This document shows positions 874 through 61,131 of a DNA stretch of 64,000 bases, piece after piece. The first letter of the stretch is position 1, and the number at the start of each line of letters is the position of its first letter. The stretch covers positions 1 through 64,000 of IMG/VR virus record IMGVR_UViG_3300028654_000001; one strand, given 5' to 3'. The translations under genes were made by a program, and so were the position numbers. Below the pieces are notes generated by a model that was given only the letters and a program-made list of their open reading frames with translations, did not search any database and was not told the origin of the DNA.

Positions 874-912
874 AGGTTACCTGTACACCCCCAAGGATAA
901 GGAATAACTCGT

Positions 913-1377
913 TTACACAGATTTACGGTTCTGCGCTAGCTGATACCCCCCACGGAACCCAGACCGGGAGATGAGTACCCCACGGTTGACTTTAGAGTTC
1001 ATTACCTTCCGAACTTGATCTCGAAACACTTCCCAGTGTTCACGCCTAATGACACCCACGGATACGGCCTCCTCTGCAAGGGTAGTAGCATTTACCCAAG
1101 GGAATTCTCCTAGTATCGACTTTCTGACCAAGTCGGATACGGTCTTGCGAGCCTTATCCTCCGCCAGTATTCGCACATCTTTGATGGACATCACTGGGGG
1201 CTCAACCACAAGTGGTTTTGCTTTAGTTACGAATTCTTCTGTTGGGCCGGTTAACAGGTGGTGCTTCCGGATCAGGGTCAGGGCATTGACCGCCGCTGTT
1301 CGGGACTCCTCGGTTCCCGTCTGCTTATCCAGAGCCAAGGACATTAAGTCCAATACCTTGTCAATAGGCGATATCAT
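913..1377 (-). CDS. DUF2786-like N-terminal domain protein with possible C-terminal winged helix
   Basis: KVLDLMSLA...EESRTAAVNALTLIRKHHL fits the DUF2786 pattern; ends SRSGFRGGYQLA (wing-like); CGGTGTA upstream. Confidence 0.55.
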   Translation of the reverse strand: MISPIDKVLDLMSLALDKQTGTEESRTAAVNALTLIRKHHLLTGPTEEFVTKAKPLVVEPPVMSIKDVRILAEDKARKTVSDLVRKSILGEFPWVNATTLAEEAVSVGVIRREHWEVFRDQVRKVMNSKVNRGVLISRSGFRGGYQLAQNRKSV

Positions 1378-1427
1378 TACTTAATCTGGTACACCGTGTC
1401 TAGGGGTTTGGTGTAGCTACCCTAGGA

Positions 1428-1622
1428 ATGGATCGTAAGAGATTATTCGACGAGCACAGAAGCCTCGCTGGAAAGTTGGTCGAAGGTGGGTTGACCCCTA
1501 ATGAGGCTCAACGGCTATCCATGGTAAGAGCTGAAATAGATAAGTTACAGGTTGAGGAGATCAGGCAGGGGCAGGGCTCTCTAGGGAAAGAACTTAGAAA
1601 AAACCCTAGGGTGAAACTTTGA
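1428..1622 (+). CDS. Hypothetical protein
   Basis: GGTGTA at 1410-1415, 12 nt before ATG. Confidence 0.55.
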   Translation: MDRKRLFDEHRSLAGKLVEGGLTPNEAQRLSMVRAEIDKLQVEEIRQGQGSLGKELRKNPRVKL

Positions 1623-1672
1623 GTGGTGTACTTGAACAATGCTGCGCAGCCGAGCAGGGGGTACTTGAGTGC

Positions 1673-2569
1673 ATGAACCTAGTATTTGACTTAGAGACCA
1701 GTGACCCGGACGATATATTCGCCCTGGCCCTTCTTGCCACCCATCCCAGATCGAATCTTGTAGCGGCAACCGTGTACCCAGGAGGAAAGGATCAAGTCGG
1801 CTTAGTCAAGCACGTCCTTGATATGCTTGGGAAGGGTTCAATCCCAGTTGGCTCAGGTCAACCTAAAGGAGAGAAGCTAAGGGTATCGAGGTTCCACACC
1901 GAGTGGCTAGGAGACATCCAACCTCGGGAGGCTGATGGTTCCGCGGTAGAGGTCATCAGAAGTGCCCTGACAGCATTCCCAGACGCTCAGCTTGTCACCG
2001 GGGCTGCCCTGAGTAACATCGCCAAGGCAGCCCTAGAGGTCACACCTTACTTCCAATCCTGGACTTGCCAGGGCGGGTTCGCAGGGGACAATATTGTACC
2101 CCCAGAGCATCGACTCGCTAAGTTTTCAGGTAAGGTTACCTGCCCAACTTTCAACTTAGCTGGGGACAGGCGAGCTGCAGGCGAGCTTCTGTGCAAAAAA
2201 CCCCTTCCAATTCCAGTAGTTAGAATGGTTGCCAAGAATGTGTGCCATGGGATGTTCTACTCACGGGACGTCGATTGGCGAGTACCTTCAGGGGCTCACC
2301 CAGGACTGGATTTCATAAAGAAAGGGATGGGCCACTATTTTCAGAAACATCCCGGAGGTAAGGCTCTTCACGACGTTGTAGCGGCCGTAGTCGCTATGAA
2401 TCCTCATATTGGCACCTGGGCCAGGGTTTTGCCTTATTGCGAGAAAAATGGGGAGTGGGGTTGTCACTCCTATGACGAAGTGTCACACACTGATCAAGAC
2501 CCCGAGAAAACCCCGGTCATCCTAACTTCCATTGATAAAAAAGAATTTGAGCGATATCTAGCAATGTGA
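1673..2569 (+). CDS. Inosine/uridine-preferring nucleoside hydrolase-like protein
   Basis: N-terminal VFDLETSDPDDIFAL Asp cluster, TGAALSN, TFNL and LHDVVAA motifs; start moved to ATG 1673. Confidence 0.75.
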   Translation: MNLVFDLETSDPDDIFALALLATHPRSNLVAATVYPGGKDQVGLVKHVLDMLGKGSIPVGSGQPKGEKLRVSRFHTEWLGDIQPREADGSAVEVIRSALTAFPDAQLVTGAALSNIAKAALEVTPYFQSWTCQGGFAGDNIVPPEHRLAKFSGKVTCPTFNLAGDRRAAGELLCKKPLPIPVVRMVAKNVCHGMFYSRDVDWRVPSGAHPGLDFIKKGMGHYFQKHPGGKALHDVVAAVVAMNPHIGTWARVLPYCEKNGEWGCHSYDEVSHTDQDPEKTPVILTSIDKKEFERYLAM

Positions 2570-2639
2570 AATTCAAGTTGACTCTTGTGTAGAAAGTGAT
2601 TAGGTTTAGCTTACTTATGGTTCCAAGTGGAAGTAAACG

Positions 2640-6035: not shown

Positions 6036-6061
6036 TACACCGGATACCTAACCCCGGTGTA
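6036..6061. promoter_or_regulatory. Back-to-back CGGTGTA promoter-like elements
   Basis: TACACCG at 6036-6042 and CGGTGTA at 6055-6061 between divergent genes; same arrangement at 1390-1415 and 32619-32645. Confidence 0.65.
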
Positions 6062-6120
6062 GTATAATATGAACTTTTTTGTTGAGATCCAGGTCCCTCA
6101 AACGTAGTAAAGAGAAAGCT

Positions 6121-11847: not shown

Positions 11848-12125
11848 TAATTCAATCGAGTGTCAGTTGGATTTTCGGGTATGTCAAGAAGCCCTATAGC
11901 GAACTTGTTGAATCGATCACGCTCTTCTTGACCCCTAGTTTGGAGGTGTTGAATGTACTCTTCTTTTATTTTCAGGATGTTTTTGGCAAGACGGGCCTCA
12001 GAGCGGTAGAGCTCTATCTTCTGCCAGATGAACAGTACTGGTACTAATCCGAATAAAACCCCGCATCCTACGAGGAAGACTTGGGCTATACCTGGGGTGA
12101 CCCTCAAGGCCTCATCAAAGTTCAT
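11847..12125 (-). CDS. Small membrane protein
   Basis: Single hydrophobic segment; coupled to ung. Confidence 0.6.
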   Translation of the reverse strand: MNFDEALRVTPGIAQVFLVGCGVLFGLVPVLFIWQKIELYRSEARLAKNILKIKEEYIQHLQTRGQEERDRFNKFAIGLLDIPENPTDTRLN

Positions 12126-12391
12126 CGGTCACCAGCGGCGAAGTCTGAGTAGAGCATTTTGGTGTCAGCCTCGAAAATGTCATAGTAGTCGATATTCGCG
12201 AATCGAGTCTTGCAGGTACCGCCTTCAGTACTCTCTTCCCACACTCGACGAGCAACTTCGTAAGAAACGTTAGCTTCGATGTCGATCCAATTGTTGTCGA
12301 ACCCGTCGTAAAGTCGTACAGTGTAGAGCTTTCCAGGCAAACCAGCAGCACAGGTCTTTGGCTTATTGACTGGCTTCTCAGGTTCAGACAT
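12122..12391 (-). CDS. Hypothetical protein
   Basis: Start moved to ATG 12391; CGGTGTA 15 nt upstream; YTVRLYDGFDNNWIDI...IDYYDIF. Confidence 0.7.
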   Translation of the reverse strand: MSEPEKPVNKPKTCAAGLPGKLYTVRLYDGFDNNWIDIEANVSYEVARRVWEESTEGGTCKTRFANIDYYDIFEADTKMLYSDFAAGDR

Positions 12392-12417
12392 AGCCTGAGT
12401 ATAGACTACACCGGGTA

Positions 12418-12810
12418 CTAACGGCAAATGCTTTCAACAAGCCGAGATCTCAGGAAGTTCTGATACGAAGCACGATCGGTCAGGCGCTCATCAAGTACCC
12501 GCTCTGGATGATCTAAGTGAGCACAATCAAGTACTTCCAGATACAAACCAAACTCCTTAATGAACCTCAAATTGATCTTGGTTAGGGCCCCTCCTACCTC
12601 TAACTCAAGAAACTCGTTGAAGTCACCGGTGTTTTTTGGGTGTTCCTGAAAGGACATCTTTGCTATTACCGGTTTCTCACCTGAAAGCGACTCAACCTCT
12701 CTCAGCGACTGCAGCATAAATTCCCAGGCTTCTTTATGAGTAAGTGAGTCAACTTTAGGCCGGGTAGGTGGTACAGTAAGAGCTCGTAGGGATTGCATCT
12801 GATTGCCCAT
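12418..12810 (-). CDS. Hypothetical protein
   Basis: 130-aa ORF in the co-oriented run. Confidence 0.6.
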   Translation of the reverse strand: MGNQMQSLRALTVPPTRPKVDSLTHKEAWEFMLQSLREVESLSGEKPVIAKMSFQEHPKNTGDFNEFLELEVGGALTKINLRFIKEFGLYLEVLDCAHLDHPERVLDERLTDRASYQNFLRSRLVESICR

Positions 12811-16660: not shown

Positions 16661-17533
16661 TTACTCGGTGAGCAGATCTAGTTGGTTGGATCTTACACCG
16701 GGTGTCGGATCCAACCTCTTTTGAGCCAAAGAGATGGCAACCGGGTTCTGGTCAATACCCACCCAATCACGTCCTAGGTTCTGTGCTGCCACCAGTGTTG
16801 TACCAGATCCGCACATTGGATCAAGAATACGCCCGCCAGGATTGGTGCCCAGTCGAACAACCCTATCCAGCAACTTCAAAGGCTTTTGAGTTGGGTATCC
16901 GGTGGACTCCGAGTTCAAGGGAGTGTTGGCCTTCATCGCCGAGCAATCAGTCCAAACACTCCCCATCCGGCGCCCCTTGTCTTCGTAGTACCGATAGGCC
17001 TTCCCATTGATGACTCGTTCCCGGTACCGCCTCCCTGACTCGTCGACGGACTTGAAGTGCATGTTCCGGCTGGTCTCGGCATACGGCTCTCGAACCTCTG
17101 GGTCATCCGAGTTGTAGGTGAACTCATCCCCGCGGGAGTAGACCAGGATCGTTTGGTGGGTGACACTCAGGCCCTTCTTGCCTCGAGCCCCATTCCCGGG
17201 AACCCAAATGATCTCCCCTCGAAAGTTTGGCTTGCCAAAGATATCATCCGCCAGAAGTTTGGCTTCGTGAACCCCCCTGAAGTCCAAGTGGAGCCACAAG
17301 CTACCATTGGGGTTGAGGGCAGAGTGAAGAACCCTCAACCGTGGCTCTAGCATCGAGCAGAAGCCCTCGATACCACCCCAGGAGTCTTGGTACATCACAT
17401 CACCATCCACACGTGCCCCAAAGCCACTACGAGCCGAGTGTGAGTATCCAGTATTGAATGGGGGATCAACGTAAATGAGGTCGAACAGACCCACCTTTGG
17501 AACCAGATCCAGGCAGTCACCATGGTACAACAT
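16661..17533 (-). CDS. DNA adenine methyltransferase, beta class
   Basis: IYVDPPF, YPTQKP and DPMCGSGTT motifs. Confidence 0.93.
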   Translation of the reverse strand: MLYHGDCLDLVPKVGLFDLIYVDPPFNTGYSHSARSGFGARVDGDVMYQDSWGGIEGFCSMLEPRLRVLHSALNPNGSLWLHLDFRGVHEAKLLADDIFGKPNFRGEIIWVPGNGARGKKGLSVTHQTILVYSRGDEFTYNSDDPEVREPYAETSRNMHFKSVDESGRRYRERVINGKAYRYYEDKGRRMGSVWTDCSAMKANTPLNSESTGYPTQKPLKLLDRVVRLGTNPGGRILDPMCGSGTTLVAAQNLGRDWVGIDQNPVAISLAQKRLDPTPGVRSNQLDLLTE

Positions 17534-18024
17534 CAGATCACGTCTTTACGTTCGAATCGAGTCGGGACTTTGGCGTGCACTCGAGCCTCATATTCTTCCT
17601 TGTCATGAATCTGTCTTCGAGTCTGCACAGCTATCGCTGTAGTAGCCCCCTCCTCATCCCATAAGCTCTCGAGCTGGGAAACCTCCTCTTCTGGAGAGAG
17701 ATGGTTTGCACGAATAACTTCTCTATCCCAATCATTGAAGGAAACTGGTGGGGGTTGAGGAGCCCCTTTATTCAGTTCATTCACCAGCTGCATCCTACCC
17801 GCCAAACTTCTGAGTGAGTTCCAAAGTGGGTCATCTTGTTCGATAGTGGCTAGGAGTGATCGAAGGGCTATTACCCAAATTGTTTCAGTATTGGTACAAT
17901 CGGAACAAGCAAATCCAATAGTGCGATCCCTCGGATCATCACAACAGTACACAGAATGCCTGGTCTCCTGCACATGTTGGCGGGCTGCTTGGAACAACTC
18001 AGGGAAGTTTGGATACTCTGGCAC
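17533..18024 (-). CDS. CxxC protein with C-terminal PTRFER tag; paralogue of 18032..18454
   Basis: ARQHVQE..H...DD...IGFACSDC core; ends KVPTRFERKDVI. Confidence 0.75.
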   Translation of the reverse strand: MPEYPNFPELFQAARQHVQETRHSVYCCDDPRDRTIGFACSDCTNTETIWVIALRSLLATIEQDDPLWNSLRSLAGRMQLVNELNKGAPQPPPVSFNDWDREVIRANHLSPEEEVSQLESLWDEEGATTAIAVQTRRQIHDKEEYEARVHAKVPTRFERKDVI

Positions 18025-18716: not shown

Positions 18717-18943
18717 GACCACTAATACACCGGCGGCTCGGAACCAGAGCGGCCCGAAGCCCGAAACACACTGTTACTACAGTGTTCACGTAGGTGTGTT
18801 GTACAGTGTACTAAGCACACAATTAATCAGAACATTCAATGACTGACTGGTCAATCGGATTGTATGGTCAGTAAATGGTTGCCACTGACGGCATTTCTGG
18901 AGTAGTGTGCTGAGAACCAAACCCCTCACGCGTAATATTGAAC

Positions 18944-19264
18944 ATGGCCGCGAGCAAAGCTATTGAAGAGCAAGCAGAACGCTGGGCCAGAAACTACCCT
19001 GACTCGAGAACCCGAATCGAGAAGGCCTTAAACCTCGTTGATGGTTGTACTTACATTGGGGAGGACACTTGGGAGGTCAAAGGATCTTCAGGGACCATCT
19101 ACTTTGTCGGCGCGGATCCAGTCAGAAGGGTCTCCACCTGCACGTGCCCGGATAGCATGAACGGCAACCGGTGTAAGCATCGAATTGCTTGTGCTCTTCT
19201 CTGGGCCACGCGAGGTGCAAATAAGAACTACCCTTTCACCGACGCGAACGGTGTAAGGTACTGA
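18944..19264 (+). CDS. SWIM zinc-finger protein
   Basis: STCTCPD...RCKHRIA. Confidence 0.85.
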   Translation: MAASKAIEEQAERWARNYPDSRTRIEKALNLVDGCTYIGEDTWEVKGSSGTIYFVGADPVRRVSTCTCPDSMNGNRCKHRIACALLWATRGANKNYPFTDANGVRY

Positions 19265-26032: not shown

Positions 26033-26195
26033 GGGCTCTCTTTGCTAGGGTTTATAGGTTACGAACGTTTTTGACTGCTTCGGTACCAGTCATTCCATCG
26101 CGGAAGAGCCACGATTCCCAGCTGTCTTTCCAGCCCGTCATGCCCAATATTACGGATGAGGAACTAGGATCTCAGATCTTTTTCTCAAAATAGAT

Positions 26196-27300: not shown

Positions 27301-27382
27301 GGTCTTACCTAGTAGTACGTTCTGGGTGGCGGGATCTCAACAAAATAGTTGGGAAACTCTCAAACCGGTGTACTCAAGTGGT

Positions 27383-28497: not shown

Positions 28498-29108
28498 CAG
28501 AGCTTGATCTCGGGAACCATCTTGTTGGCCGTCCACTGATAAAGACCACTGAGTCGATCAAAGAAGAAGTTGACCAGTCTACGAATCGGACTATCCAGAA
28601 GAGTTCCGACAAGAGACGCTGGCCACCAGAGGCCCCAAGCTACGATCATTGCCTTGTACTCCTTGGCCTGAGGAGTATTCGAGAGATAGCCCCTCTTGTA
28701 ATTAACATTACCTAAGCTTCTGGTTATACTGTCAACAGTCAGGCCATTAGGGTAGTTCTCAGGTCTATCCTCCAGGTTCTTCTTATATTCTGCGATCTTC
28801 TTGTCGCGAGCAGTTCTGAAGTCCCATAGGTAGAACACCCACTTCCCGTATGACCAGACAATGGTTCCGGCCAAGTAGTACCCAACATACCGAAGAACCA
28901 TCCAAAAGTTATCTCGACTGAACAACTCACTGACTTTAGGCCACTTGAAGAAGTGTCCCAATATAGAGTAGCTGATTACGCTAAGGATCACCAAAGTGGT
29001 AGAGTACCCGAACTTTTCCAACTGAATCAAAAAGATCAGGGTTACGAACAAACCAACTTCGGCGGTCAACACCCACGGTAATAGCCAGAACATAAACGGC
29101 TCATACAC
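28497..29108 (-). CDS. Membrane protein
   Basis: Three to four hydrophobic segments; coupled to the NT5C gene. Confidence 0.7.
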   Translation of the reverse strand: MYEPFMFWLLPWVLTAEVGLFVTLIFLIQLEKFGYSTTLVILSVISYSILGHFFKWPKVSELFSRDNFWMVLRYVGYYLAGTIVWSYGKWVFYLWDFRTARDKKIAEYKKNLEDRPENYPNGLTVDSITRSLGNVNYKRGYLSNTPQAKEYKAMIVAWGLWWPASLVGTLLDSPIRRLVNFFFDRLSGLYQWTANKMVPEIKL

Positions 29109-29179
29109 CAGGATTCGAATTACTGGAAGTAAAAAAGAGACCGTCTGTCAAAAGTCATATAACTGTGGTACTAGGTGGC

Positions 29180-32607: not shown

Positions 32608-32688
32608 CAATTTTAGGATACACCAGAACAATGCGAATCGGTGTAACTTACTGATGAACCTGACAATTCAACTAAGAAGTGCAGCCTA

Positions 32689-34438: not shown

Positions 34439-34551
34439 TTCATAGATTATTACACGTGAGGGGTTTCAATCTCACCAATAAATCGACATTAGTACTGTTT
34501 TTTGGCCAATGGTTTTGTACTGATTCGGCCAGTTATGGTGTACATTCCACT

Positions 34552-35018: not shown

Positions 35019-35042
35019 CATTCCGGTGTACTAGAGTATCCC

Positions 35043-36074: not shown

Positions 36075-36242
36075 CCACTGTTGCGCGTGTGGCAAGGAAC
36101 TCTGGGTGCACCCAGAGATTGCTGGGCTCGAACTCTATTGCGATGACTGCCCATTTCCAAAGCCCCCTTGTGAGACCTGTGGCAAGGATGATTGTAACGG
36201 AGAGTGCTGTAACTGCGAAGGTTGTGTGGAGAGACGAGCTAC

Positions 36243-36740: not shown

Positions 36741-36774
36741 AACCTGACGAGTACACCGAAATCATTATGAGACA

Positions 36775-37173: not shown

Positions 37174-37232
37174 GATCCATACTACGCTTCAGTTAGGTAA
37201 ATCTCGCGCAAATAAGTAGTACCCCCTACTAC

Positions 37233-37493: not shown

Positions 37494-37729
37494 GCTGGGC
37501 CACCAGCATCCTCGCTCATCTCAGGGGTCTTGAGTAGCGTATTGAAGTCCTCCCTCGTGAGTTGAGCTCGAACCACATCCCCTGACGAGAGTCTAAGTTT
37601 GAGGAAGTACCTTTCGCTGCCGGGCCATGGTTTCAAGTCGGATAGGAATCCAGGCCTATTCGGATCTGGGATATGGTCAATATCCCTTGTTTCCTCATAG
37701 CTAACAACAGTGACTGGGAACTCTTGCAT
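37490..37729 (-). CDS. Hypothetical protein
   Basis: GGTGTA upstream; ATGA-coupled to the next gene. Confidence 0.6.
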   Translation of the reverse strand: MQEFPVTVVSYEETRDIDHIPDPNRPGFLSDLKPWPGSERYFLKLRLSSGDVVRAQLTREDFNTLLKTPEMSEDAGGPA

Positions 37730-38072
37730 GGTCGGTACCTATTAAATCTCTACACCTCCTAATGGGTTGCACCCTCTTCAGTCATTGGTCGGTGTACACC
37801 AAAGGGTAGGTTCACTTTTTTGTTAGCAAGACAACGATGGTTGAAGTCATCAATAGCGACAACATTACGTAGAGGAATTTCAGTGTTGACCGAAGTTTTC
37901 TGTCAACCTCTGCATCTTCTGACGGGCCAGTCACTCGTTTCACCATGTGGGTATACTACACCATTGCTGAGTACTGAACAATCAATCGATCTATTGGATA
38001 CCAATTGACAAAAGTACTGAACCTGAAGTAACCAGAGAATTTCGCTACTGAATGCATGAGGATTAGATTTAG

Positions 38073-38924
38073 ATGGCTATCCATTTTTACCCGAAAGTCG
38101 GCGGACGCGTAGACTTTGACACCCCAGAAGAAGCAGCCAGGTTTTTTGAGATAACAGGTGGAGGTACCATCGAGGCCCCTAAGCCTGAAGCTCAAGTAGC
38201 CACGGTTAGCGCCCAAGCATCTGATATTGTTCCTCTAACCCCGAAGGTAAGGGCTAAGAGGAAGACCTCAAACCTCAAGCAGCGGTTGGAGGATTCGATA
38301 CAGATTGTCATGGGTAATCAGGAAGTTACTTCCCCTCAACTATACGGTAAGCTCAGTGAAAAAGGGTGGTTACCTGATAACAGCAAAGACCCTCTGAATT
38401 ACATTCGGTCTATTCTGTCCTCCAACAAAGGCATTTTCAAAAGCGAGAAACGGGGCTACTACCACTTAGACCCTAGCAACCCCTATACCAGTGGTGACCA
38501 TGAGGCGCCTATCGAGGGTCATGTGAACCCAAAGACAGCCAAGGCTCCTAAGGCCGAGCCTGTCGAGGCCCCTCCTGTAGTTGAAGAAGTGATCGAACCT
38601 CCAGAGTTCGTCGAAACCCCTGAACTTGAAGGGGTGACTACCCAGCCAGTGATTCAGCCTTCTATCGTCGAGCCCCCACCGGAGGTCGTCGAAACCCCTG
38701 TGTCAGATGACACCGAAACCTTGGTGGCTCAGCTCTCGCAAGATCCCGTTGAACCTCCACCGGTTGTCAAAGCCCCTCCTGTGGTTGTCAAACCTCCACC
38801 AGTGATTGTGGCAGCCCCACCCCAACCATCGGTCAAGATCGTGACCGAGTTCCCGAGAGTTCCTGAATCAGATGACCCAGTACTTGATATCCTGAATGAA
38901 TTTGCAGAAGTATTGGACGTCTGA
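38073..38924 (+). CDS. Winged-helix DNA-binding protein with Pro-rich tail
   Basis: IQIVMG...LYGKLSEKGW...YIRSILS...KRGYYHL. Confidence 0.6.
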   Translation: MAIHFYPKVGGRVDFDTPEEAARFFEITGGGTIEAPKPEAQVATVSAQASDIVPLTPKVRAKRKTSNLKQRLEDSIQIVMGNQEVTSPQLYGKLSEKGWLPDNSKDPLNYIRSILSSNKGIFKSEKRGYYHLDPSNPYTSGDHEAPIEGHVNPKTAKAPKAEPVEAPPVVEEVIEPPEFVETPELEGVTTQPVIQPSIVEPPPEVVETPVSDDTETLVAQLSQDPVEPPPVVKAPPVVVKPPPVIVAAPPQPSVKIVTEFPRVPESDDPVLDILNEFAEVLDV

Positions 38925-38926
38925 CC

Positions 38927-39139
38927 TCATACAAGGTCGTCTTTGAGAACTCTCTCTAATCGGGTAAGTCTCTGCCCAGTATCATGATCTGGGCAGGACT
39001 CATCATCGGCTCTCGCCGCTATCCCTTTCTCACCGGTCTTACGATTCACCGGTTGAATAAGAGTGTACCCACGATTACAGGCTAATCCAAGCTTGGTGTG
39101 CTCGGAGCTCCACTTGCACTCGCTACACGATAATCTCAC
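38927..39139 (-). CDS. Cys Zn-binding family member with tag
   Basis: GTG 39139; SCSEC...CNRG...CPD...LTRLERVL. Confidence 0.7.
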   Translation of the reverse strand: MRLSCSECKWSSEHTKLGLACNRGYTLIQPVNRKTGEKGIAARADDESCPDHDTGQRLTRLERVLKDDLV

Positions 39140-39500
39140 CCTGAAGGATCCTTTCAAATCGAGTTGGATACAGGGTCTCAGCCTCTTCCTCGCGCTCAAC
39201 AAAACCTGGACGGCAGTAGGATAACTGAAGGAAGCCACCCTCTGGCGTAGTATATATGATCTTCCAATCATACAAGTTAAGGTGATCTATATTTACAATC
39301 CACTCAAGGCAGTACTTCATCAGGAAGTAGGGATCTTCTCTGACCCAAGCCAACCTAGGCCACTTAACAACGGCGCTCGTAAGCTCATTCTTCAGAGCAT
39401 GAACGAACTCAGAGATCCCAGCCCCAAGCCCGTTAACCTTGAATAGAGGGTGACCCGAATCGTCTTCCGAGACTGCTACGAGAAGTTCCTTGTAACTCAC
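39123..39500 (-). CDS. Hypothetical protein with C-terminal tag
   Basis: Ends LYPTRFERILQGEIIV. Confidence 0.7.
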   Translation of the reverse strand: MSYKELLVAVSEDDSGHPLFKVNGLGAGISEFVHALKNELTSAVVKWPRLAWVREDPYFLMKYCLEWIVNIDHLNLYDWKIIYTTPEGGFLQLSYCRPGFVEREEEAETLYPTRFERILQGEIIV

Positions 39501-39745
39501 AGGACAACCCCACTCAAGATCCTATCAAACCTCGTGGGCCTAATATCTAGTTTGTCACCACAAATCTCGCTGTGGGTCATGCTGAGCACCCTTGGAACCT
39601 CTTGTGTTGCCTTATCGGGAATCCATATGTAGAACACATAATGCCCCTTGCAACAGGGGGCATACCCGGAGTAGTAAGTTGGGTCATCCTCCACGTGAAA
39701 CTTATGTGAACAATCCATGCAGTTGGTCAGAGCCATAGGCATCAC
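39497..39745 (-). CDS. Cys/His Zn-binding family member with tag
   Basis: CMDC...CCKGH...CGD...PTRFDRIL. Confidence 0.75.
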   Translation of the reverse strand: MMPMALTNCMDCSHKFHVEDDPTYYSGYAPCCKGHYVFYIWIPDKATQEVPRVLSMTHSEICGDKLDIRPTRFDRILSGVVL

Positions 39746-39795
39746 TCATGCACGAGATTATCACGAACCATGCTGATCCGGTGTATGGATCAACA

Positions 39796-40284
39796 ATGGC
39801 CGACGAGATCGAAGACTACTGGGAGGGGATTAGGCCCCAGAGACCAAATGACACCGTTCCAGCTCCGAAGATCGAGGAGTATCAAGAGCCATTTAGTTAC
39901 ACCCATGAAGACTTAGGAATTGGGCTCCGAGCTATTAGTCGTCTTCGAACGGAGTTGTCAACACGAGAAGATGCGGAACAGTTAGAAAGAACCCTGCGTC
40001 TGGGCCTTGGAATACCCGATAGTATCCCCTCTCTGACCCCCCTCAACTCTCTTCAATCTTGGATGGACACTTCTGAAGTCAGAGCGGCGCTTGGTCTACA
40101 ACAGTCACAGAATCAAGCCATAACGAACCTCATTAGGGCTTTCGAAGCCCTAGGGTATCGCTGTGAAGCGTCATTTAGCAACTTCAGGCTCTACGTGGCC
40201 CTACCTGCCATCACCCCAGATAATTGGTCAGCTCATCAATTAACTGAGGGTGGGGTTCAGTTGATCTTGAATTTACCAAGATAG
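39796..40284 (+). CDS. N-tagged protein with ALGYxCE domain
   Basis: MADEIEDYWEGIRP; CGGTGTA 10 nt upstream of ATG 39796. Confidence 0.75.
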   Translation: MADEIEDYWEGIRPQRPNDTVPAPKIEEYQEPFSYTHEDLGIGLRAISRLRTELSTREDAEQLERTLRLGLGIPDSIPSLTPLNSLQSWMDTSEVRAALGLQQSQNQAITNLIRAFEALGYRCEASFSNFRLYVALPAITPDNWSAHQLTEGGVQLILNLPR

Positions 40285-40548
40285 GGGTTTCTTGGTATAG
40301 GCCACCTTTCTGGTTTTGATACTCCTAAAACCAGAACACACCCCATGAAACCCCATGACAGGGCATGGCGAGTCTGGAAAGTATACCACAAGAACCATCG
40401 GTTCTTAGATTGACCGACCATGTGGATTACTTAGTCAAAACACCACACAAACTGTCTTGACACCCCACTCCACCCCATGAATAACTAGGTACCTGGGTGT
40501 AACCATTTATTTTCGCGAGATTCCCCTAGTTGAAACGTAATCTAGGTC

Positions 40549-43484: not shown

Positions 43485-43718
43485 AAGGTAGTATACACCG
43501 ATTAGCGCTGAGTAAACAGCCTAGTGTCAACGAAGAGGACGATATCACCAGGCTCCGAACTTTTTGTAATCATTACATTTAGCCCGAACTCAAACAGCTT
43601 CCAAGCAATGTACTGAGCAGTTCCAGAGGTGCCCTCGACCACCTGCTTATGCTGGTACGGAGCGTCCTTGAGTTGGGAGCCCCCATCCAATCAATGATCA
43701 TAATTTTCATAGAAACCC

Positions 43719-48707: not shown

Positions 48708-50285
48708 TCATTTATCCAATAGTACGAAGTCCGTTCGGCGGTTCTTGGCTCGACAGGGTTCAATATCCTCTGAGCAGAGCGGATTATCAGGACCCGCACC
48801 CTCAGGCAGGAACTGGTTGTGATCAAACCCAAGAGTCGCCAGGTAAGAAACCACAGACGTGGCTCGAGCCTGACTGATCCTCTTGTTAGTAGCAGCGTTG
48901 CCAGTGTTGTCGGTATTACCAATGATCTTGAAGTGTTGCCCGGGGAACGCTTTGGCTTGCTCCACGAACATCATATCAATGATCCCCTTGGCATTCTCAT
49001 CCAAAGCAGTGCTGTTGGTAGCAAAGCTCACTCGAATGGCTTTGCTTGCTACCGCCGCCGCTTGTTGGACTTGAGTAGTAGGAGCCGTAAACACAGTCTT
49101 TGGGGCAGCCGCTTGTGCCTTGTCATTATCAAGTTTGAGATCCTTGATGAAGTCCAGATCAACGATTTGGCTATAGGGTAGTGTATTCTGGGCTAGGTTC
49201 AACTTCCCATATACTGTGGTCATCTTCTCGTAGAGCTCTTTTGCAGTCACACCCTTGTAAGCTGGGTCGAGCCCAAAAAATTGAAGGTTGTCCCCATAGG
49301 TAGTGAGTCGAACGTTGTTGATAGCCTTCAGACAGAACTCAGGTTGATACAGAGGACAACCCTCATGTAGGATGTTTGCTGCTTTCGACTTGGCTGCAGA
49401 GGACCCATTGATCTCAGCTGCGCCCTTCAACCAACCCCGGACCAACTTGAGTAAGTCATCCCGACGCCGATCAAATGTCGCTTGCTTAACGAAAAAGCCA
49501 TCAGCGATAATATGACTGGCCTGCTTTGTGCTGATCAAGACATGGGCTCCGGCTACCGCTGTAACAGCCTCGTCATCACCCGGGGACCAGACTACAGCTG
49601 CATCAACATTCCCAGACTTGAAGGTCTCGACAGCCGTAGCCGCGTCCTTCTGTTTGACAATAGTGACATCCATTGGAGAGACCCCAGCCGAGTCCAACAT
49701 CCACAGAAGGAGAGTATGAGAGGGGGTACCCTCTGCAACGGCAATCTTCTTACCTAACAAGTCAGCTGTAGTCTTGATCTTGGCGGTCACTACAATGGCA
49801 TCGCCGCCTTGTGACCAGTCCGTCTGGAAGAACATCTTGACAGTACCACCGTAGTTACCGCTCTCTGTCGGGAATGAGTCAAAGGTTCCCCACATGAGAT
49901 CCATGGCACCATTCCGGAACGCAGCCCTAGAGGCATCGTAGTCGTCCATGACTTCGAAGTTCACGCAGATCCCATCTGTGTGGTACCGGCTGCTCGGGTT
50001 ATCCTTAAACCCACCGTTCCAGTACTCACCGCCGACGTAACCACCCCAGGTCACGACTCCGATCTCAATGCACTTGTGAGGGCCGGCTGCAGCCACGGTA
50101 GCTGCATTCGGAGTGGGGGTGTCGGAAACGGATCCTTCCTTCCCACCAGCCATGAGGCCCTTCACATCCCCCTCTTTCTTACCCTCGGGAGCGACATACT
50201 TTCTAGCGGACCAGAGTCCGGTTAGGACCAACCCTGAGGCTATTATGAATAGACCGGCTTTACCGGCACCTGTGAGCTTTGCCAT
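48708..50285 (-). CDS. NMT1/SsuA-type substrate-binding protein fused to an OmpA-C peptidoglycan-binding domain
   Basis: N-terminal TM; DWSQGGDAIV and KIAVAEGTPSH; C-terminal GNTDNTG...N..ISQARA...KNRRTDF. Confidence 0.88.
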   Translation of the reverse strand: MAKLTGAGKAGLFIIASGLVLTGLWSARKYVAPEGKKEGDVKGLMAGGKEGSVSDTPTPNAATVAAAGPHKCIEIGVVTWGGYVGGEYWNGGFKDNPSSRYHTDGICVNFEVMDDYDASRAAFRNGAMDLMWGTFDSFPTESGNYGGTVKMFFQTDWSQGGDAIVVTAKIKTTADLLGKKIAVAEGTPSHTLLLWMLDSAGVSPMDVTIVKQKDAATAVETFKSGNVDAAVVWSPGDDEAVTAVAGAHVLISTKQASHIIADGFFVKQATFDRRRDDLLKLVRGWLKGAAEINGSSAAKSKAANILHEGCPLYQPEFCLKAINNVRLTTYGDNLQFFGLDPAYKGVTAKELYEKMTTVYGKLNLAQNTLPYSQIVDLDFIKDLKLDNDKAQAAAPKTVFTAPTTQVQQAAAVASKAIRVSFATNSTALDENAKGIIDMMFVEQAKAFPGQHFKIIGNTDNTGNAATNKRISQARATSVVSYLATLGFDHNQFLPEGAGPDNPLCSEDIEPCRAKNRRTDFVLLDK

Positions 50286-54747: not shown

Positions 54748-55715
54748 GACTTCGTCTTCTTCTTTGGGGACTTTTTAGACTGTTGAGGTGCTTCATTCTT
54801 CTTGGCACCTCGAACAGAGAGCTTCAACTTATCTAGGGCAGCGGACAACTGAGACTTGATGTTGTCCCCGATGTTAGCCTCATCTTGTTCGAAGTGGCTC
54901 AAGAGCGAGACTGCCGCGTCACTGTCACCAAACCTGACTTGCTCCTCTACGCGCCTGGATACCTCATCAAGAGCAGCAGATCGGTCAATGTGGGACTTGA
55001 TGACCTCCACCACAGCGTCCGAAAGACCGGGGAGCCCAGAATACAATCGCTTGGAGATGATCTCCTCGAGTTCTGAACCTTCACGACCAAGCTCAGCAAG
55101 TTTGGTCAGTAGCTGCTTTCGCTTGGTATCCCTCTCCTTCACCAAAGCCCTGAACTCCCCAATGGACATGCTCTGATCAAGTTCAGCCATCAGAATTGGT
55201 TCAGAGATGGTCTCAACCTCATCTCGAATCTTGTCCCCTTGAACCAGAATGACTTCCTTACGATCGATCATCCTCGCTGTTTCCGGATCGATGATCTGCA
55301 CTGCAGCCTTCAGTGCAGGCAACTCATCGAGAACAGCCTTTGCTCTCTGCTCGGCTATATCATTTAGGGCACTTGGGTCGCGCCCACCTACACTAGGGTT
55401 AGGATAATCGTATTGCCCACTCTCAGTCTTCGCATAGAATCGATGGGGGTTGAAGTCCAAACCATTCCCATATCGACGAGTATCATTGTCATAGAGCTTA
55501 CGAAGATGTTTCTGGCTGATGAACTTCCGACTCTCAGCTGTACGGGAAATTTCATAAGCCGTCTTTTCTAGAAGGTATCGAGCCGCAATGACTCGATTAT
55601 GGAATAACTCAACAAACTCAATCTTCTTCCCCTCCCCCCAGTTCACTATATTTGAGTTCTGTACAGAGGATAGAAAGTCACCTGTCGGGGTATCCAGTAG
55701 CTGGTTGTCGTCCAT
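54744..55715 (-). CDS. Coiled-coil hypothetical protein
   Basis: 323-aa helical ORF. Confidence 0.75.
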   Translation of the reverse strand: MDDNQLLDTPTGDFLSSVQNSNIVNWGEGKKIEFVELFHNRVIAARYLLEKTAYEISRTAESRKFISQKHLRKLYDNDTRRYGNGLDFNPHRFYAKTESGQYDYPNPSVGGRDPSALNDIAEQRAKAVLDELPALKAAVQIIDPETARMIDRKEVILVQGDKIRDEVETISEPILMAELDQSMSIGEFRALVKERDTKRKQLLTKLAELGREGSELEEIISKRLYSGLPGLSDAVVEVIKSHIDRSAALDEVSRRVEEQVRFGDSDAAVSLLSHFEQDEANIGDNIKSQLSAALDKLKLSVRGAKKNEAPQQSKKSPKKKTKS

Positions 55716-56643: not shown

Positions 56644-56666
56644 AGAATAAATTACACCAGACTTTA

Positions 56667-57005
56667 GTGAGATCGGAGTTCCTCGTGCGTAGTACTAGTA
56701 TGTCCAGGAAGAATTCCAAGGTTCTCAGTGACCTACTCAGCAAGTTGAACCAAGAACTACTAACTGTAGGCTTGAAGAATGATACTGGAATATCAGGGTG
56801 TTTTCGCTTCCGGCTCCCCTTGGGTCAGTACCCGCTCATCGGTGTACTTCGGGACACTGGGCTCTACCTATGCCGTCAAAGCGTTGACTTCATTGAAGTT
56901 CTAGGTTCCGAGATTATTCCCCTGGACACCCATGTCCAGGACATGGTTTCCAAGATCAAGGATCGATACAACACCCTAGTTCGCTGTTACAGCCCAGAGA
57001 GTTGA
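56667..57005 (+). CDS. Hypothetical protein
   Basis: Directly precedes infA; start may be ATG 56700. Confidence 0.55.
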   Translation: MRSEFLVRSTSMSRKNSKVLSDLLSKLNQELLTVGLKNDTGISGCFRFRLPLGQYPLIGVLRDTGLYLCRQSVDFIEVLGSEIIPLDTHVQDMVSKIKDRYNTLVRCYSPES

Positions 57006-58189: not shown

Positions 58190-58475
58190 AATATAGGAGT
58201 ACGCGCCAGCTGGGTGAATCTCACCAAATTAAACCAACGAGACTTTGAACCACTGAGGCAAGGCCATTGGTCAGGTTATCCCAACTGATGTTCGTAATAA
58301 CTGTCATCAAACTCCATACACCAGGCGCCTAAAAGTTTGTGTGAACCCGTGATCCAACCTAGGGGTTTGTACTTGTACTCAAATACGTGATAATCATTAC
58401 AAGATAGCACCAATTACTTAAATAGTTGACTAACTTTGTTGAGATCTGAGACCCTCAAACGTAATATGTAACATC

Positions 58476-59107: not shown

Positions 59108-59109
59108 AC

Positions 59110-59295
59110 ATGGACAAGAACACTAAAGACCGGAGTGAGTTAGGATACCTATTAGCTGGGGACTTCATCCTCAACAGCAAAGGGCAAGCTTCTTGGAAAA
59201 CTAACTACCCAGTACTGAAGGAGATCAGAGAGGAGGCGCGTAGGCTAGGGTCATCCCGAATCTTCTACGACTCGATAACTGTCACGATGGCCTAA
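59110..59295 (+). CDS. Hypothetical protein
   Basis: ATG immediately after the previous stop. Confidence 0.5.
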   Translation: MDKNTKDRSELGYLLAGDFILNSKGQASWKTNYPVLKEIREEARRLGSSRIFYDSITVTMA

Positions 59296-59325
59296 GTGAA
59301 CTTCCTTTGATAGCCCTGAGTAGAC

Positions 59326-60663
59326 ATGGTCACCGACATTGTCATAACCCATCGGGTTGCTGAAAGATTCATCCAAGCTTCCTCCCCAATAGTGGTCAAG
59401 GAAGTGCAGGACAGGATTGAAGTTTCGGGACCTTACGACAAGATGAAGGACTTGATCCCGTACTTGAGGGGTAAGTTTGAGTATCGCGGCCAGGATCATA
59501 CTTGGTGGACACCAAGTACCAAGATGACCAACCTTAAGATGAAGAACCTTAAGAAGAAGGTTGATGAGGTCAATGGGAAGTTTGGTCCTGACCCTGTGAA
59601 GGTAGAGGAGTCCGCGGAAGCTAAGGCGGAAAGGCTTGAGGAAGCTAAGAAACTTCTCAGCAAAGCTGTTCACATGCGGGTGCCCGGACTCACCTTCAGT
59701 CCTATCGGGGTCGATGGAGCTCAGTTGACAGGGGCTCTCACTGACTTGAGGGTGGATATTAACAAGTCTGGCGGGAATTACGGACCTGAGTTCTCAAAGT
59801 TTCAAGCTCACCTAATCAAGCCGACGGAATTCGAAAATCTTTTGGAGGCGGTCGCGGATCAAGGGCGGCTTGTGGCCAAAGCCCAAGCTGACTTATCTAG
59901 CCTACTTCCACGCAAGTTCCCGAGTTTGAAGATTGATGTTGGAACCAACAATGGGAGTTACCTGCTAATAGTCTCAGGGAAAACCTACGACTTCAAGGAT
60001 GAAATCAAGAAGCGAGTACCAGTGACCTTCAATGGTCAGGGGAGCTTCTGGTGGGCTCCAATCCATCAAGTAAAGGAGGCTCAAGTAAAGGAATTAATTG
60101 AGTATCTTGAGGGTGAGGAACGGAAACTAGCCGAGAAGTGGAAGGCGGATCGGGAGCCAGCAGTTGAGAGAAAGAGGCCTAACCAAAGGGGTGAACATTG
60201 CATTAATTGTGGTGGTTGGGTAGACGCTGGTGAGGGTTATCTAGTCAACCACTACGATTCTGAAGAGGGTGACTTTGTTTGGAAGGTCAAGCACAAGGAT
60301 CCAGATGACTGCGCTAGGATTCGAAATGAGGTGAAGATTCGAAGTGAGGCAGCTAGGACTAAAGGCCAAGCTCGAAGGAACCTCATGCTCATGTGTGAGA
60401 AGTCCGAGTACTATGTGCAGGGTACTGGCCTCAAACCGCCTGGGGAGCAAGTCTGGATTGACAAGCATTCGCTTGGGTACGGCGGTGGGACCTGGGTAGT
60501 CATTGAACCCGGTGAGAGTTACTTCTGGTACGTCAACAACAATGGTGCCGACGGTGATGATTGGTCACGCAATAACGTCACTACGGGCGGAGCTGGTGCC
60601 ATTGGGTATCGACTCCCCTATACGGATGAAGCCAAAGTCTTGATTGAAGTGGCCAAAGAGTGA
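59326..60663 (+). CDS. Multi-domain protein with N-terminal RVAERF tag
   Basis: THRVAERFIQAS; two VSGxxYDxKD..W repeats; CINCG...H...C zinc site. Confidence 0.75.
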   Translation: MVTDIVITHRVAERFIQASSPIVVKEVQDRIEVSGPYDKMKDLIPYLRGKFEYRGQDHTWWTPSTKMTNLKMKNLKKKVDEVNGKFGPDPVKVEESAEAKAERLEEAKKLLSKAVHMRVPGLTFSPIGVDGAQLTGALTDLRVDINKSGGNYGPEFSKFQAHLIKPTEFENLLEAVADQGRLVAKAQADLSSLLPRKFPSLKIDVGTNNGSYLLIVSGKTYDFKDEIKKRVPVTFNGQGSFWWAPIHQVKEAQVKELIEYLEGEERKLAEKWKADREPAVERKRPNQRGEHCINCGGWVDAGEGYLVNHYDSEEGDFVWKVKHKDPDDCARIRNEVKIRSEAARTKGQARRNLMLMCEKSEYYVQGTGLKPPGEQVWIDKHSLGYGGGTWVVIEPGESYFWYVNNNGADGDDWSRNNVTTGGAGAIGYRLPYTDEAKVLIEVAKE

Positions 60664-60670
60664 GCCCTGC

Positions 60671-61015
60671 TCACTCCCAGTGTACCCCATCTGGGCTCTC
60701 AATTCGAGAAACAGTCAACCTCCCGCACTTACCACAGGGTACAGGCTCAACCTCGACCCCCTCTCGAACCGAGGTTAGGGGTATGTCGGGTACGGGTACC
60801 AATTCGTCAGTCAAGGTCACCGATCCTACACTATTCCGTTCCAAGTGACGAACATGGTGTTTGTTGAGGAGCAACCTTGATAGTTGTACACTAAGGCTAT
60901 TAGGTTGGAATGGGGTTGGAATGGTTGACCAATTAGGAGCAACCTTTGGTTTCTCCGGCTTCCATCCAGGACGAATGGTTTCCCAGTATCCTTCTAGATC
61001 GTATGTATCAGCCAT
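60671..61015 (-). CDS. N-tagged hypothetical protein
   Basis: Begins MADTYDLEGYWETIRP. Confidence 0.7.
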   Translation of the reverse strand: MADTYDLEGYWETIRPGWKPEKPKVAPNWSTIPTPFQPNSLSVQLSRLLLNKHHVRHLERNSVGSVTLTDELVPVPDIPLTSVREGVEVEPVPCGKCGRLTVSRIESPDGVHWE

Positions 61016-61131
61016 CGATCACAAGCTCTTGTGGTAGTTGGTTGGATTCACAATGACTGTGATCGTGTTCTTCATAACTAAAAGCTACACCGAGGGACCA
61101 TCCGAGGATGCACTTATAAGTCCTCTTCAAC

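What the first reader, a model, noticed from the sequence alone, without database searches (positions are those of the whole stretch)
884..61092. Recurrent (C)GGTGTA element 9-15 nt before start codons: phage-specific promoter giving near-leaderless mRNAs
Seen, with gap to start in brackets. Minus strand: 884 (10), 1390 (12), 6036 (13), 12407 (15), 18726 (9), 32619 (11), 36752 (11), 43494 (9), 56653 (9), 61086 (10). Plus strand: 1410 (12), 19249 (13), 27366 (10), 34537 (9), 35024 (12), 39779 (10). CGTA variants: 18929 (9), 37183 (9), 40534 (9), 58200 (10), 58458 (12). It is always oriented toward the gene, sometimes back-to-back at divergent junctions, and usually has no SD in the gap. Inference: if the TA begins a -10-like element, transcription starts at or a few nt before the ATG. 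It is not the canonical TGn extended -10, so a phage sigma factor or RNAP may read it. It also corrects several ORF starts.
Basis: partly seen in the sequence, partly recalled or inferred. Interest (0 to 1): 0.6.

Follow-up and report, generated by a model that had tools for sequence, protein, structure and literature searches.

The report
Start-codon-hugging promoter motifs in megaphage
A 512-kb phage places a strict GGTGTA box, or a longer two-part box, 9-12 bases before about 130-155 start codons that lack ribosome-binding sites, so these are most likely phage-specific promoters making leaderless mRNAs, though no transcript ends could be mapped.

Summary
All 21 listed sites exist. In the window, 17 of 45 GGTGTA copies have an ATG/GTG 8-15 nt downstream that opens a real ORF. 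Permuted hexamers do so 5.7% of the time (P=1.7e-10).

The window is the start of a complete 512,571-bp phage genome. Genome-wide, GTGTA is the most enriched 5-mer before starts, with about 100-120 sites. The consensus is YYGGTGTAnT, there is no -35 box, and the gaps are mostly 9, 10 or 12 nt.

The GAGAT-N15-GTA spacing is fixed, and 31-37 sites have a start codon.

Genes of both classes lack Shine-Dalgarno sequences, while other genes, including the 275-445 kb block, show them at 5-6 nt. The motifs favour divergent junctions and operon heads. They are conserved at orthologous genes in related huge-phage contigs while the flanks diverge.

The phage encodes three sigma-like proteins, and no RNA polymerase catalytic subunit was detected.

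Best reading (about 0.7): these are promoters whose geometry places the transcription start on or 1-2 nt before the ATG. No RNA data exist, so transcription starts and the sigma assignment are inferred.

The parts
884..889 (-). Class I box GGTGTA, gap 10, ATG at 873 (ORF 685-873, 62 aa)
1390..1395 (-). Class I box, gap 12, ATG at 1377 (154 aa). Back-to-back with the box at 1410(+), 14 nt apart
1410..1415 (+). Class I box, gap 12, ATG at 1428 (64 aa)
6036..6041 (-). Class I box, gap 13, ATG at 6022 (85 aa). Back-to-back with an orphan box at 6056-6061(+)
6084..6106 (+). Class II element (GAGAT-N15-GTA), gap 14, ATG at 6121 (405 aa). A class I box lies 28 nt upstream at 6056
12407..12412 (-). 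Class I box, gap 15, ATG at 12391 (89 aa). Shortens the TTG-started ORF 12122-12427
18726..18731 (-). Class I box, gap 9, ATG at 18716 (92 aa)
18912..18934 (+). Class II variant (GAGAA-N15-GTA), gap 9, ATG at 18944 (106 aa).
19250..19255 (+). Class I box, gap 13, ATG at 19269 (67 aa)
26151..26173 (-). Class II element, gap 9, ATG at 26141 (29-aa ORF). The same ATGACGGGCTGGA start follows a class II element in relative L005
27316..27338 (-). Class II element, gap 15, ATG at 27300 (192 aa)
27367..27372 (+). Class I box, gap 10, ATG at 27383 (169 aa). Shortens ORF 27299-27892
29104..29109 (-).
32619..32624 (-). Class I box, gap 11, ATG at 32607 (139 aa). Back-to-back with the box at 32640(+)
32640..32645 (+). 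Class I box, gap 8, ATG opening an 11-codon ORF whose stop overlaps (TAATG) the ATG at 32689 of a 162-aa gene
34451..34473 (-). Class II element with TGTA core, gap 12, TTG at 34438 (90 aa)
34537..34542 (+). Class I box, gap 9, ATG at 34552 (86 aa). Shortens the GTG-started ORF 34456-34812
35025..35030 (+). Class I box, gap 12, ATG at 35043 (123 aa)
36752..36757 (-). Class I box, gap 11, ATG at 36740 (165 aa)
37183..37205 (-). Class II element, gap 9, ATG at 37173 (132 aa).
37957..37962 (-). Class I box, gap 10, ATG at 37946 (44-aa ORF; uncertain gene)
39780..39785 (+). Class I box, gap 10, ATG at 39796 (162 aa). Shortens ORF 39748-40284
40517..40539 (+). Class II element, gap 9, ATG at 40549 (80 aa).
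43494..43499 (-). Class I box, gap 9, GTG at 43484 (79 aa)
56653..56658 (-). Class I box, gap 9, ATG at 56643 (90 aa). Back-to-back with the class II element at 56669(+)
56669..56691 (+). Class II element, gap 8, ATG at 56700 (101 aa)
58200..58222 (-). Class II element, gap 10, ATG at 58189 (125 aa).
58441..58463 (+). Class II element, gap 12, ATG at 58476 (75 aa).
61086..61091 (-). Class I box, gap 10, ATG at 61075 opening an 18-codon ORF that ends 3 nt before ATG 61015 of a 114-aa gene

Best explanation
Both motif classes are most likely phage-specific promoter elements read by a sigma-containing bacterial-type RNA polymerase. They sit so close to the start codon that transcription begins on the A/G of the start codon or 1-2 nt before it, producing leaderless or near-leaderless mRNAs translated without a Shine-Dalgarno sequence.

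Class I (YYGGTGTAnT) has only a -10-like region and no -35 box. With TA as -12/-11, gaps of 9-10 nt put the ATG 6-7 nt after the hexamer.

Class II has two parts: a GTGAGA(TC) box, a 17-bp spacer, TArTAy, a 5-nt TGAGC discriminator, then ATG. Both classes share the GTAnT core in the same register relative to the ATG.

The host polymerase is probably redirected by one or more of the three phage sigma-like proteins. Class II could instead be read by the host primary sigma as an early class. Class I drives non-structural genes such as nucleotide metabolism, methylases and ClpX. The mostly one-strand 275-445 kb block has few of these elements.

Shown here: the motifs, their spacing, the Shine-Dalgarno exclusivity, their conservation and the sigma genes. 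Inferred: the transcription start position, which sigma reads which class, and the temporal order.
For: 1. Strict coupling to starts. Class I gaps are 10 nt (37 sites), 9 (30), 12 (16) and 11 (10). Class II gaps are 9 nt at 20 of 37 sites.

2. Class II has a second conserved block at a fixed distance. GAGAT-N15-GTA occurs 65 times, against 16-26 for N13, N14 and N16. Its logo spans about 40 bp with a variable spacer. Two blocks at a fixed spacing is the layout of a -35/-10 promoter.

3. Hybrid sites carry GAGAT-N15/16 in front of GGTGTA in the same register (L009 position 5307; own genome 259226).

4. Shine-Dalgarno 5-mers occur in the gap at 2% of class I and 0% of class II sites. The rate is 4% at random positions and 13% for other genes. 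Other genes show a Shine-Dalgarno peak at 5-6 nt spacing.

5. The first base of the start codon is A or G in 97% of class I sites, and the base before it is C or T in 68% (87% in class II). This fits the usual pyrimidine-purine preference at transcription starts.

6. Of class I genes, 43% have a divergent upstream neighbour, against 28% of other genes. Only 17% of co-directional class I genes lie within 10 nt of the upstream gene, against 56%.

7. Some divergent start codons are only 18-36 nt apart and that space is filled by the two boxes, leaving no room for other promoters.

8. Conservation in relatives. GGTGTA-N9-12-ATG occurs 23, 41 and 21 times in three related contigs, against 4, 6 and 1 for the reversed-pattern control. 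In the syntenic 473-kb relative L008, the box is kept at orthologous genes while flanks diverge.

9. A few conserved boxes have no adjacent start. GGTGTA lies 35 nt upstream of an ortholog pair with a Shine-Dalgarno-like GGAAAGGA in between. A class II element at 76659 has no adjacent ORF upstream of the 269-aa sigma gene.

10. There are three Sigma70_r2 proteins: a 188-aa r2+r4 protein named FliA-like by its source, a 269-aa protein and a 384-aa protein. No Rpb2_6, Rpb1_2 or T7-type polymerase domains were found.

11. A distant phage contig whose sigma is 35% identical has ordinary Shine-Dalgarno sequences and no GGTGTA before any of its 34 called starts.
Against: - No transcript 5' ends are available, because no RNA run was listed.
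- Almost all of the excess GGTGTA copies are next to a start. If this is a general promoter element, the near absence of copies with a longer leader is unusual and would also fit a translation signal.
- About 16% of class I starts are GTG and a few are TTG. These are generally weaker on leaderless mRNAs (my knowledge).
- Two sites in relative G003 carry a perfect GAGGTGAT between the box and the ATG.
- No class I or II box was found at the right distance before the tRNAs, the tmRNA or the CRISPR arrays, so there is no independent non-coding test case.
- The host and its own promoters are unknown.
- Divergent phage polymerases could escape the Pfam models, and the T7-type model did not ring in any control genome.
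Confidence: 0.7

Rival explanations
1. The box is an RNA-level translation signal: a non-Shine-Dalgarno ribosome-binding element, or the binding site of a phage translation factor, lying in a 5' UTR made from promoters further upstream.
For: Spacing to the start codon is tight and Shine-Dalgarno sequences are absent. Almost all excess copies are start-adjacent.
Against: - GGTGAA and TGGTGA, which would pair with the anti-Shine-Dalgarno sequence as well or better, show little or no enrichment at this spacing.
- The invariant T and A of the box cannot pair with the 16S 3' tail (my knowledge of that sequence).
- A gap of 9-12 nt is longer than the 5-6 nt Shine-Dalgarno spacing this phage uses elsewhere.
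- Class II has an upstream block at fixed N15 spacing, typical of a -35/-10 pair.
- At divergent junctions of 18-36 nt there is no room for separate promoters.
- No S21 or S1 gene was found in the phage.
Confidence: 0.12
2. The boxes are promoters, but they are read by an unrecognised phage-encoded RNA polymerase rather than by host polymerase with a phage or host sigma.
For: - The motifs are short and very strict, like the promoters of phage polymerases. AR9 uses AACA-N6-TA/G and phiKZ uses TATG (PMC5312081).
- Most proteins of this 512-kb genome have no family assignment.
- The T7-type model could not be validated on controls.
Against: - No multisubunit polymerase domains were detected, although the same models ring in all 14 control genomes.
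- Three sigma-like genes are present.
- Class II resembles a sigma70-type layout: GTGAGA-N17-TArTAy matches 4 of 6 positions in each hexamer (my counting).
- AR9 transcripts have 26-491 nt leaders and phiKZ has no leaderless transcripts.
Confidence: 0.12
3. The box is an operator for a phage transcription regulator, or an endoribonuclease processing site that trims mRNAs to leaderless form.
For: Several divergent junctions carry inverted TACACC...GGTGTA pairs. A fixed sequence near the start would suit either a repressor or a cleavage site.
Against: - Only 12 inverted pairs exist genome-wide and their spacing ranges from 0 to 59 nt, so most sites are single half-sites.
- The strict orientation towards the gene, and the register shared with the two-part class II element, are not expected of an operator.
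- A processing model still needs promoters, for which tight divergent junctions leave no room.
Confidence: 0.05

Closest known systems
Thermus phage P23-45 middle/late promoters (Berdygulova et al. 2011)
   Same: They are phage promoters of the extended -10 class that do not depend on a -35 box (PMC7403470). From memory, many of their transcripts are leaderless. A phage that mixes leaderless genes with other genes is the same strategy.
   Different: The P23-45 promoters are read by host sigma-A holoenzyme modified by small phage proteins, not by a phage sigma. The sequence here (GGTGTA, with TG directly abutting TA) is different. The phage here is about six times larger and has a second, two-part class. 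I could not read the primary paper.
Phage T4 late promoters (TATAAATA, read by gp55 sigma)
   Same: A short, strict, -10-only element with no -35 box, read through a small phage-encoded sigma-family protein, and scattered before many genes (my knowledge).
   Different: T4 late mRNAs carry leaders and Shine-Dalgarno sequences. The sequence is unrelated. Class I here drives non-structural genes rather than virion genes.
Bacterial leaderless genes with a -10 box about 10 nt before the start codon (Actinobacteria, Deinococcus-Thermus)
   Same: A -10-like box at a fixed short distance upstream of ATG/GTG, no Shine-Dalgarno sequence, and a purine as first base (my knowledge; Cortes 2013 and Shell 2015 appear only as citations in the reference lists returned).
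   Different: Those boxes are the host's generic TAnnnT. Here the element is a high-information GGTGTA, or a 40-bp two-part motif, confined to one phage clade and absent in a more distant sigma-bearing phage.
ECF / sigma-28 type promoters (e.g. B. subtilis sigma-W TGAAAC-N16-CGTA; sigma-28 TAAA-N15-GCCGATAA)
   Same: A CGTA-type -10 core with a -35 block at fixed spacing. The 188-aa phage sigma has only regions 2 and 4 and is labelled FliA-like. The consensus sequences are quoted from memory.
   Different: The -35 block (GTGAGATC) lacks the AAC or TAAA motifs. No experiment links any sigma to either class.
Jumbo-phage polymerase promoters (AR9 AACA-N6-TA/G; phiKZ TATG)
   Same: Very short, strict phage-specific promoter words in giant phages (PMC5312081).
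   Different: Those are read by phage multisubunit polymerases and give 26-491 nt leaders in AR9. No leaderless transcripts were seen in phiKZ. No such polymerase was detected here.

Membership tests
Promoter producing leaderless mRNA | Promoter -10 element at a fixed distance such that +1 falls on the start codon | tested here: met
   Gaps of 9-10 nt dominate, putting the ATG 6-7 nt after a TAnnnn hexamer. Class II has a 5-nt discriminator.
Promoter producing leaderless mRNA | No Shine-Dalgarno sequence between promoter and start; start codon begins with a purine | tested here: met
   Shine-Dalgarno 5-mers at 2% (class I) and 0% (class II) against 13% of other genes. The first base is A or G in 97% of class I starts.
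Promoter producing leaderless mRNA | Mapped primary 5' end at the start codon | not testable with these tools
   No RNA sequencing run was listed for this sequence.
Sigma70-family two-part (-35/-10) promoter | Two conserved blocks with a fixed spacer of about 17 bp | tested here: met
   This applies to class II only. GAGAT-N15-GTA occurs 65 times against 16-26 at other spacings, equivalent to GTGAGA-N17-TArTAy. Class I has no -35 block.
Canonical extended -10 (TGnTATAAT) promoter | TG at -15/-14 separated by one base from a TATAAT-like hexamer | tested here: not met
   In GGTGTA the TG abuts TA directly, and the hexamer after TA is only nTna.
Shine-Dalgarno ribosome-binding site | Complementarity to the 16S 3' tail, with the core 5-9 nt from the start | tested here: not met
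   Only GGTG could pair. GGTGAA and TGGTGA are not comparably enriched at this spacing. The gap is 9-12 nt, against this phage's own Shine-Dalgarno peak at 5-6 nt.
T4-late-type promoter (-10 only, phage sigma) | Single strict -10 word, no -35 box, phage-encoded sigma-family protein present | tested here: inconclusive
   The word and the absence of a -35 box are met and sigma genes are present. No link between a sigma and the motif could be tested.
Dimeric regulator operator | Inverted repeat with fixed spacing at most sites | tested here: not met
   Only 12 inverted pairs out of about 119 sites, with spacing from 0 to 59 nt.

The most novel reading that the evidence does not exclude
A clade of roughly 0.5-Mb CRISPR-bearing phages may run a sigma cascade. 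In it, a phage sigma would read a -10-only GGTGTA word, and a second 40-bp two-part promoter class would operate alongside. Together they would create a regulon of about 130-155 leaderless genes, roughly a fifth of the genome. Early and middle expression would then be independent of Shine-Dalgarno pairing, while the 275-445 kb block would rely mostly on other signals, including Shine-Dalgarno sequences. If so, this would be a programmed split of one phage's translation between two initiation modes.
Probability: 0.35. Interest if true: 0.7.

Novelty: new variant of a known kind. Interest (0 to 1): 0.55.

Why it matters
Gene expression in uncultivated huge phages is almost unknown.

- The motif gives single-base predictions of about 130-155 transcription and translation starts. 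It corrects gene starts that standard callers place wrongly.
- It offers a concrete pairing problem: three sigma-like proteins against two promoter classes, which can be tested in vitro without the unknown host.
- If the leaderless reading holds, it would be one of the largest leaderless regulons predicted for a phage. It would also show that a single virus can split its genes between Shine-Dalgarno-led and leaderless initiation.
- The motifs are also a practical marker for recognising fragments of this phage clade in metagenomes. A pattern search recovered two further related contigs.

Tried and rejected
- RNA evidence: no RNA run was listed for window 30000-39999.
- Rfam and tRNA scans of the window found nothing.
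- A near-identity search of the INPHARED phage collection found no match.
- A single-protein scan of viral contigs with the 188-aa sigma found no relatives. Relatives came instead from the 956-aa protein fragment (window 61132-63999), a class II DNA pattern and the protein word search.
- A promoter test on non-coding genes failed. No correctly spaced class I or II box precedes the tRNAs, the tmRNA (a GTGTA lies 15 nt upstream but is not GGTGTA) or either CRISPR array.
- A search for a third, late promoter consensus in the 275-445 kb region by eye and by k-mers gave nothing clear.
- PWM iteration from GTGTA seeds did not broaden the motif. Single-mismatch variants are barely enriched (GCGTA 17 against 6.5), so the word is truly strict.
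- Short upstream ORFs after the box are not enriched: 17 observed against about 21 expected.
- Host identification failed.
- Literature searches for the motif, or for leaderless huge phages, found nothing relevant. The P23-45 primary paper is not held.
- A chance or compositional artefact is rejected.

Full report
**Context**

The window is the first 64 kb of a complete 512,571-bp IMG/VR virus record with direct terminal repeats. GC content is 49%. ARAGORN predicts 42 tRNA genes plus a tmRNA-like gene, most of them clustered at 458-480 kb. The genome also carries two CRISPR-like arrays. It is an uncultivated huge phage. No near-identical phage is in INPHARED, and the host is unknown.

- The window holds 45 GGTGTA copies against 26.6 expected; no shuffle out of 100 reaches 45.
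- Seventeen of the 45 are followed at 8-15 nt by an ATG/GTG opening an ORF of at least 40 aa. The rate for 59 permutations of the hexamer is 5.7% (P=1.7e-10).
- Genome-wide, 73 of 297 copies have an ATG opening an ORF of at least 60 aa at gaps 9-12. Control words give mostly 0-3 per gap position.
- GTGTA is by far the most enriched 5-mer before first ATGs (82 against 10.6), while AGGAG reaches only 42 against 19.5.
- GGTGTA is the most enriched intergenic hexamer.
- Aligned sites give YYGGTGTAnT. No information lies further upstream or downstream, so this is a signal and not a repeated gene family.
- The word is strict: one-mismatch variants are barely enriched.
The site at 61086(-) opens only an 18-codon ORF that abuts the next gene.

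**A second class**

The "CGTA variants" share a long upstream block. The consensus is aaTTGGTGAGATC-naaa-CCCCTCA-aaY-GTA-rTAyTGAGC-ATG.

- GAGAT-N15-GTA occurs 65 times, against 16-26 for N13, N14 and N16.
- 31-37 copies have a start codon, usually exactly 9 nt after the GTA.
- They are concentrated in the first 160 kb, before small ORFs.
- Read as a sigma70-type layout, this is GTGAGA-N17-TArTAy, then a 5-nt discriminator, then ATG (my counting).
- Class I and class II share GTAnT in the same register relative to the ATG. Hybrid sites carry both GAGAT-N15/16 and GGTGTA.

Two conserved blocks separated by a fixed spacer is the layout of a -35/-10 promoter, not of a ribosome-binding site. This is the main reason I favour a promoter.

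**Other tests that separate a promoter from a translation signal**

- *Shine-Dalgarno exclusivity.* Shine-Dalgarno 5-mers occur in the gap of 2% of class I and 0% of class II genes. The rate is 4% at random positions and 13% for other genes. Other genes show a clear peak 5-6 nt before the start, so ordinary Shine-Dalgarno sequences are used elsewhere in this genome. Some genes in the 275-445 kb block, which runs mostly on one strand, carry obvious ones.
- *No anti-Shine-Dalgarno logic.* GGTGAA and TGGTGA would pair at least as well, yet show little or no enrichment at this spacing.
- *Start base.* The first base is A or G in 97% of class I starts. The base before it is C or T in 68% of class I and 87% of class II sites, as expected at a transcription start.
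- *Gene context.* 43% of class I genes follow a divergent neighbour, against 28% of other genes. Only 17% of co-directional class I genes sit within 10 nt of the upstream gene, against 56%. My gene calls are home-made, and starts of non-motif genes are taken as the longest ORF, which exaggerates this contrast somewhat.
- *Tight divergent junctions.* Some divergent ATGs are only 18-36 nt apart, and that space is filled by the two boxes. No separate promoters would fit.
- *Not an operator.* Only 12 inverted pairs exist, with spacing from 0 to 59 nt.

**Conservation**

- Three related IMG/VR contigs show GGTGTA-N9-12-ATG 23, 41 and 21 times, against 4, 6 and 1 for the reversed control.
- A 473-kb ENA contig (L008) is syntenic with 247-267 kb of this genome at 50-90% protein identity. 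At orthologous genes the box is retained while flanking bases diverge. The gap drifts (12 against 11, 10 against 15).
- Three of four motif-predicted starts in L008 equal the pipeline's independent gene calls. The fourth has a conserved in-frame extension with synonymous changes.
- One conserved box lies 35 nt upstream of an ortholog pair, with a Shine-Dalgarno-like GGAAAGGA in between. A class II element upstream of the 269-aa sigma gene has no adjacent ORF. So the elements are not strictly tied to a start codon.
- A distant phage contig whose sigma is only 35% identical uses plain Shine-Dalgarno sequences and has no GGTGTA before any of its 34 called starts.

**Who reads the boxes**

The genome has three Sigma70_r2 proteins:

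- a 188-aa protein with only regions 2 and 4, labelled FliA-like by JGI, with 60-87% identical orthologs in related huge-phage contigs and then a drop to below 40%;
- a 269-aa protein;
- a 384-aa protein.

Further region-4 hits lie near 424 kb and 272 kb. No Rpb2_6 or Rpb1_2 domain was found, although these models ring in all control genomes. The T7-type model found nothing, but it did not ring in any control either. Host polymerase redirected by phage sigma(s) is therefore the most economical reading. A cryptic phage polymerase cannot be excluded.

Class II could be read by the host primary sigma, since it matches 4 of 6 positions in each hexamer. Class I looks like a -10-only promoter of the T4-late type. 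The CGTA core also recalls ECF and sigma-28 -10 elements. Both comparisons are from memory and are leads, not tests.

Class I genes that could be named are non-structural: OMP decarboxylase, a GNAT acetyltransferase, dNMP kinase, a nucleoside deoxyribosyltransferase-like protein, a transglycosylase, ClpX with an intein, two DNA methylases, an ADP-ribosylglycohydrolase and a Cas12f-like protein. Both classes are rare at 280-440 kb.

**What is not shown**

- No RNA run was listed, so transcription starts are inferred from geometry alone.
- Nearly all excess copies are start-adjacent, which would also suit a translation element.
- 16% of class I starts are GTG.
- Two sites in a relative carry a perfect GAGGTGAT inside the gap.
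- No non-coding gene provides an independent test.

**Comparison with known systems**

- AR9 and phiKZ have short phage-specific promoter words, but with 26-491 nt leaders in AR9 and no leaderless transcripts in phiKZ (PMC5312081, PMC8244752).
- Thermus phage P23-45 uses extended -10 middle/late promoters read by modified host holoenzyme (PMC7403470). From memory, many of its transcripts are leaderless. I could not read the primary paper.
- Leaderless genes with a -10 box about 10 nt before the start are common in some bacterial phyla (my knowledge).
- The kind is therefore known. New here are the sequence, the two-class arrangement, the scale (about 130-155 genes) and the setting in a sigma-encoding megaphage clade. 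Literature searches found no description of it.

**Verdict**

It needs the correction that two promoter classes exist. Confidence is about 0.7 that these are promoters giving leaderless or near-leaderless mRNAs. Confidence in any specific sigma assignment is much lower.

Noticed in passing
own genome G000:C1 113,700-115,860 (+) and 124,310-126,260 (-), outside the window: Two CRISPR-like arrays of about 31 and 28 repeats at a roughly 72-nt period. The repeats share the start GTTTCAATGAACGGGGA. Degenerate repeat copies flank both arrays.
   Followed up: partly
L004 4,840-6,290 (+) (IMGVR_UViG_3300037067_010056): A related huge-phage contig carries its own CRISPR-like array of about 20 repeats (GCCTCAGTGGTTCWTTGAGTGTATGGGGATTGGAG), with a repeat unlike those of the window's phage.
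   Followed up: no
own genome 285,339-286,967 (-): A 542-aa protein driven by a class I box has a weak, below-cut-off Cas12f1-like TNB domain hit. It may be a compact Cas12/TnpB-type nuclease belonging with the arrays.
   Followed up: no
own genome 277,071-279,446 (-): A ClpX-like AAA+ protein (zinc finger, AAA_2, ClpB_D2-small) is interrupted by a Hint/homing-endonuclease domain, i.e. an intein. It is preceded by a class I box.
   Followed up: no
own genome 457,935-498,674: ARAGORN predicts 42 tRNA genes and a tmRNA-like gene with an unusual tag (VADLPRDSLGSG), most of them in one minus-strand cluster, plus a lone tRNA with a CTA anticodon at 498,602-498,674 that would read TAG.
   Followed up: no
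window 17534-17556 (-) and 29980-30002 (+): The same 23-nt word, TTCGAACGTnArGACGTGATCTG, ends two different genes (17533-18024 and 29554-30003). It suggests paralogues with a shared C-terminus whose stop overlaps the next start.
   Followed up: partly
window 32640-32691 (+), 61015-61091 (-), 6056-6110 (+): Three class I boxes are followed at the usual gap by very short ORFs (11, 18 and 12 codons) that end at or just before the start of a longer gene. They could be leaderless upstream ORFs, but such cases are not enriched genome-wide.
   Followed up: partly
own genome 256,144-256,190 (-) and L008 9,950-10,000: The 188-aa sigma gene has neither class I nor class II upstream. It has a conserved GGTG(T/C)TATGAT, which looks like an ordinary extended -10 box, followed by a leader of about 20-25 nt and a TTG start.
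   Followed up: no
window 48708-50285 (-): A 525-aa protein combines a periplasmic substrate-binding fold (NMT1/phosphonate-binding) with a C-terminal OmpA domain. This is a weak hint that the host is Gram-negative.
   Followed up: no
G003 55,649-55,687 (IMGVR_UViG_3300037088_000682): A back-to-back pair of class I boxes each has a perfect GAGGTGAT Shine-Dalgarno sequence between the box and the ATG. This is unlike almost all other sites and is unexplained by the leaderless model.
   Followed up: no
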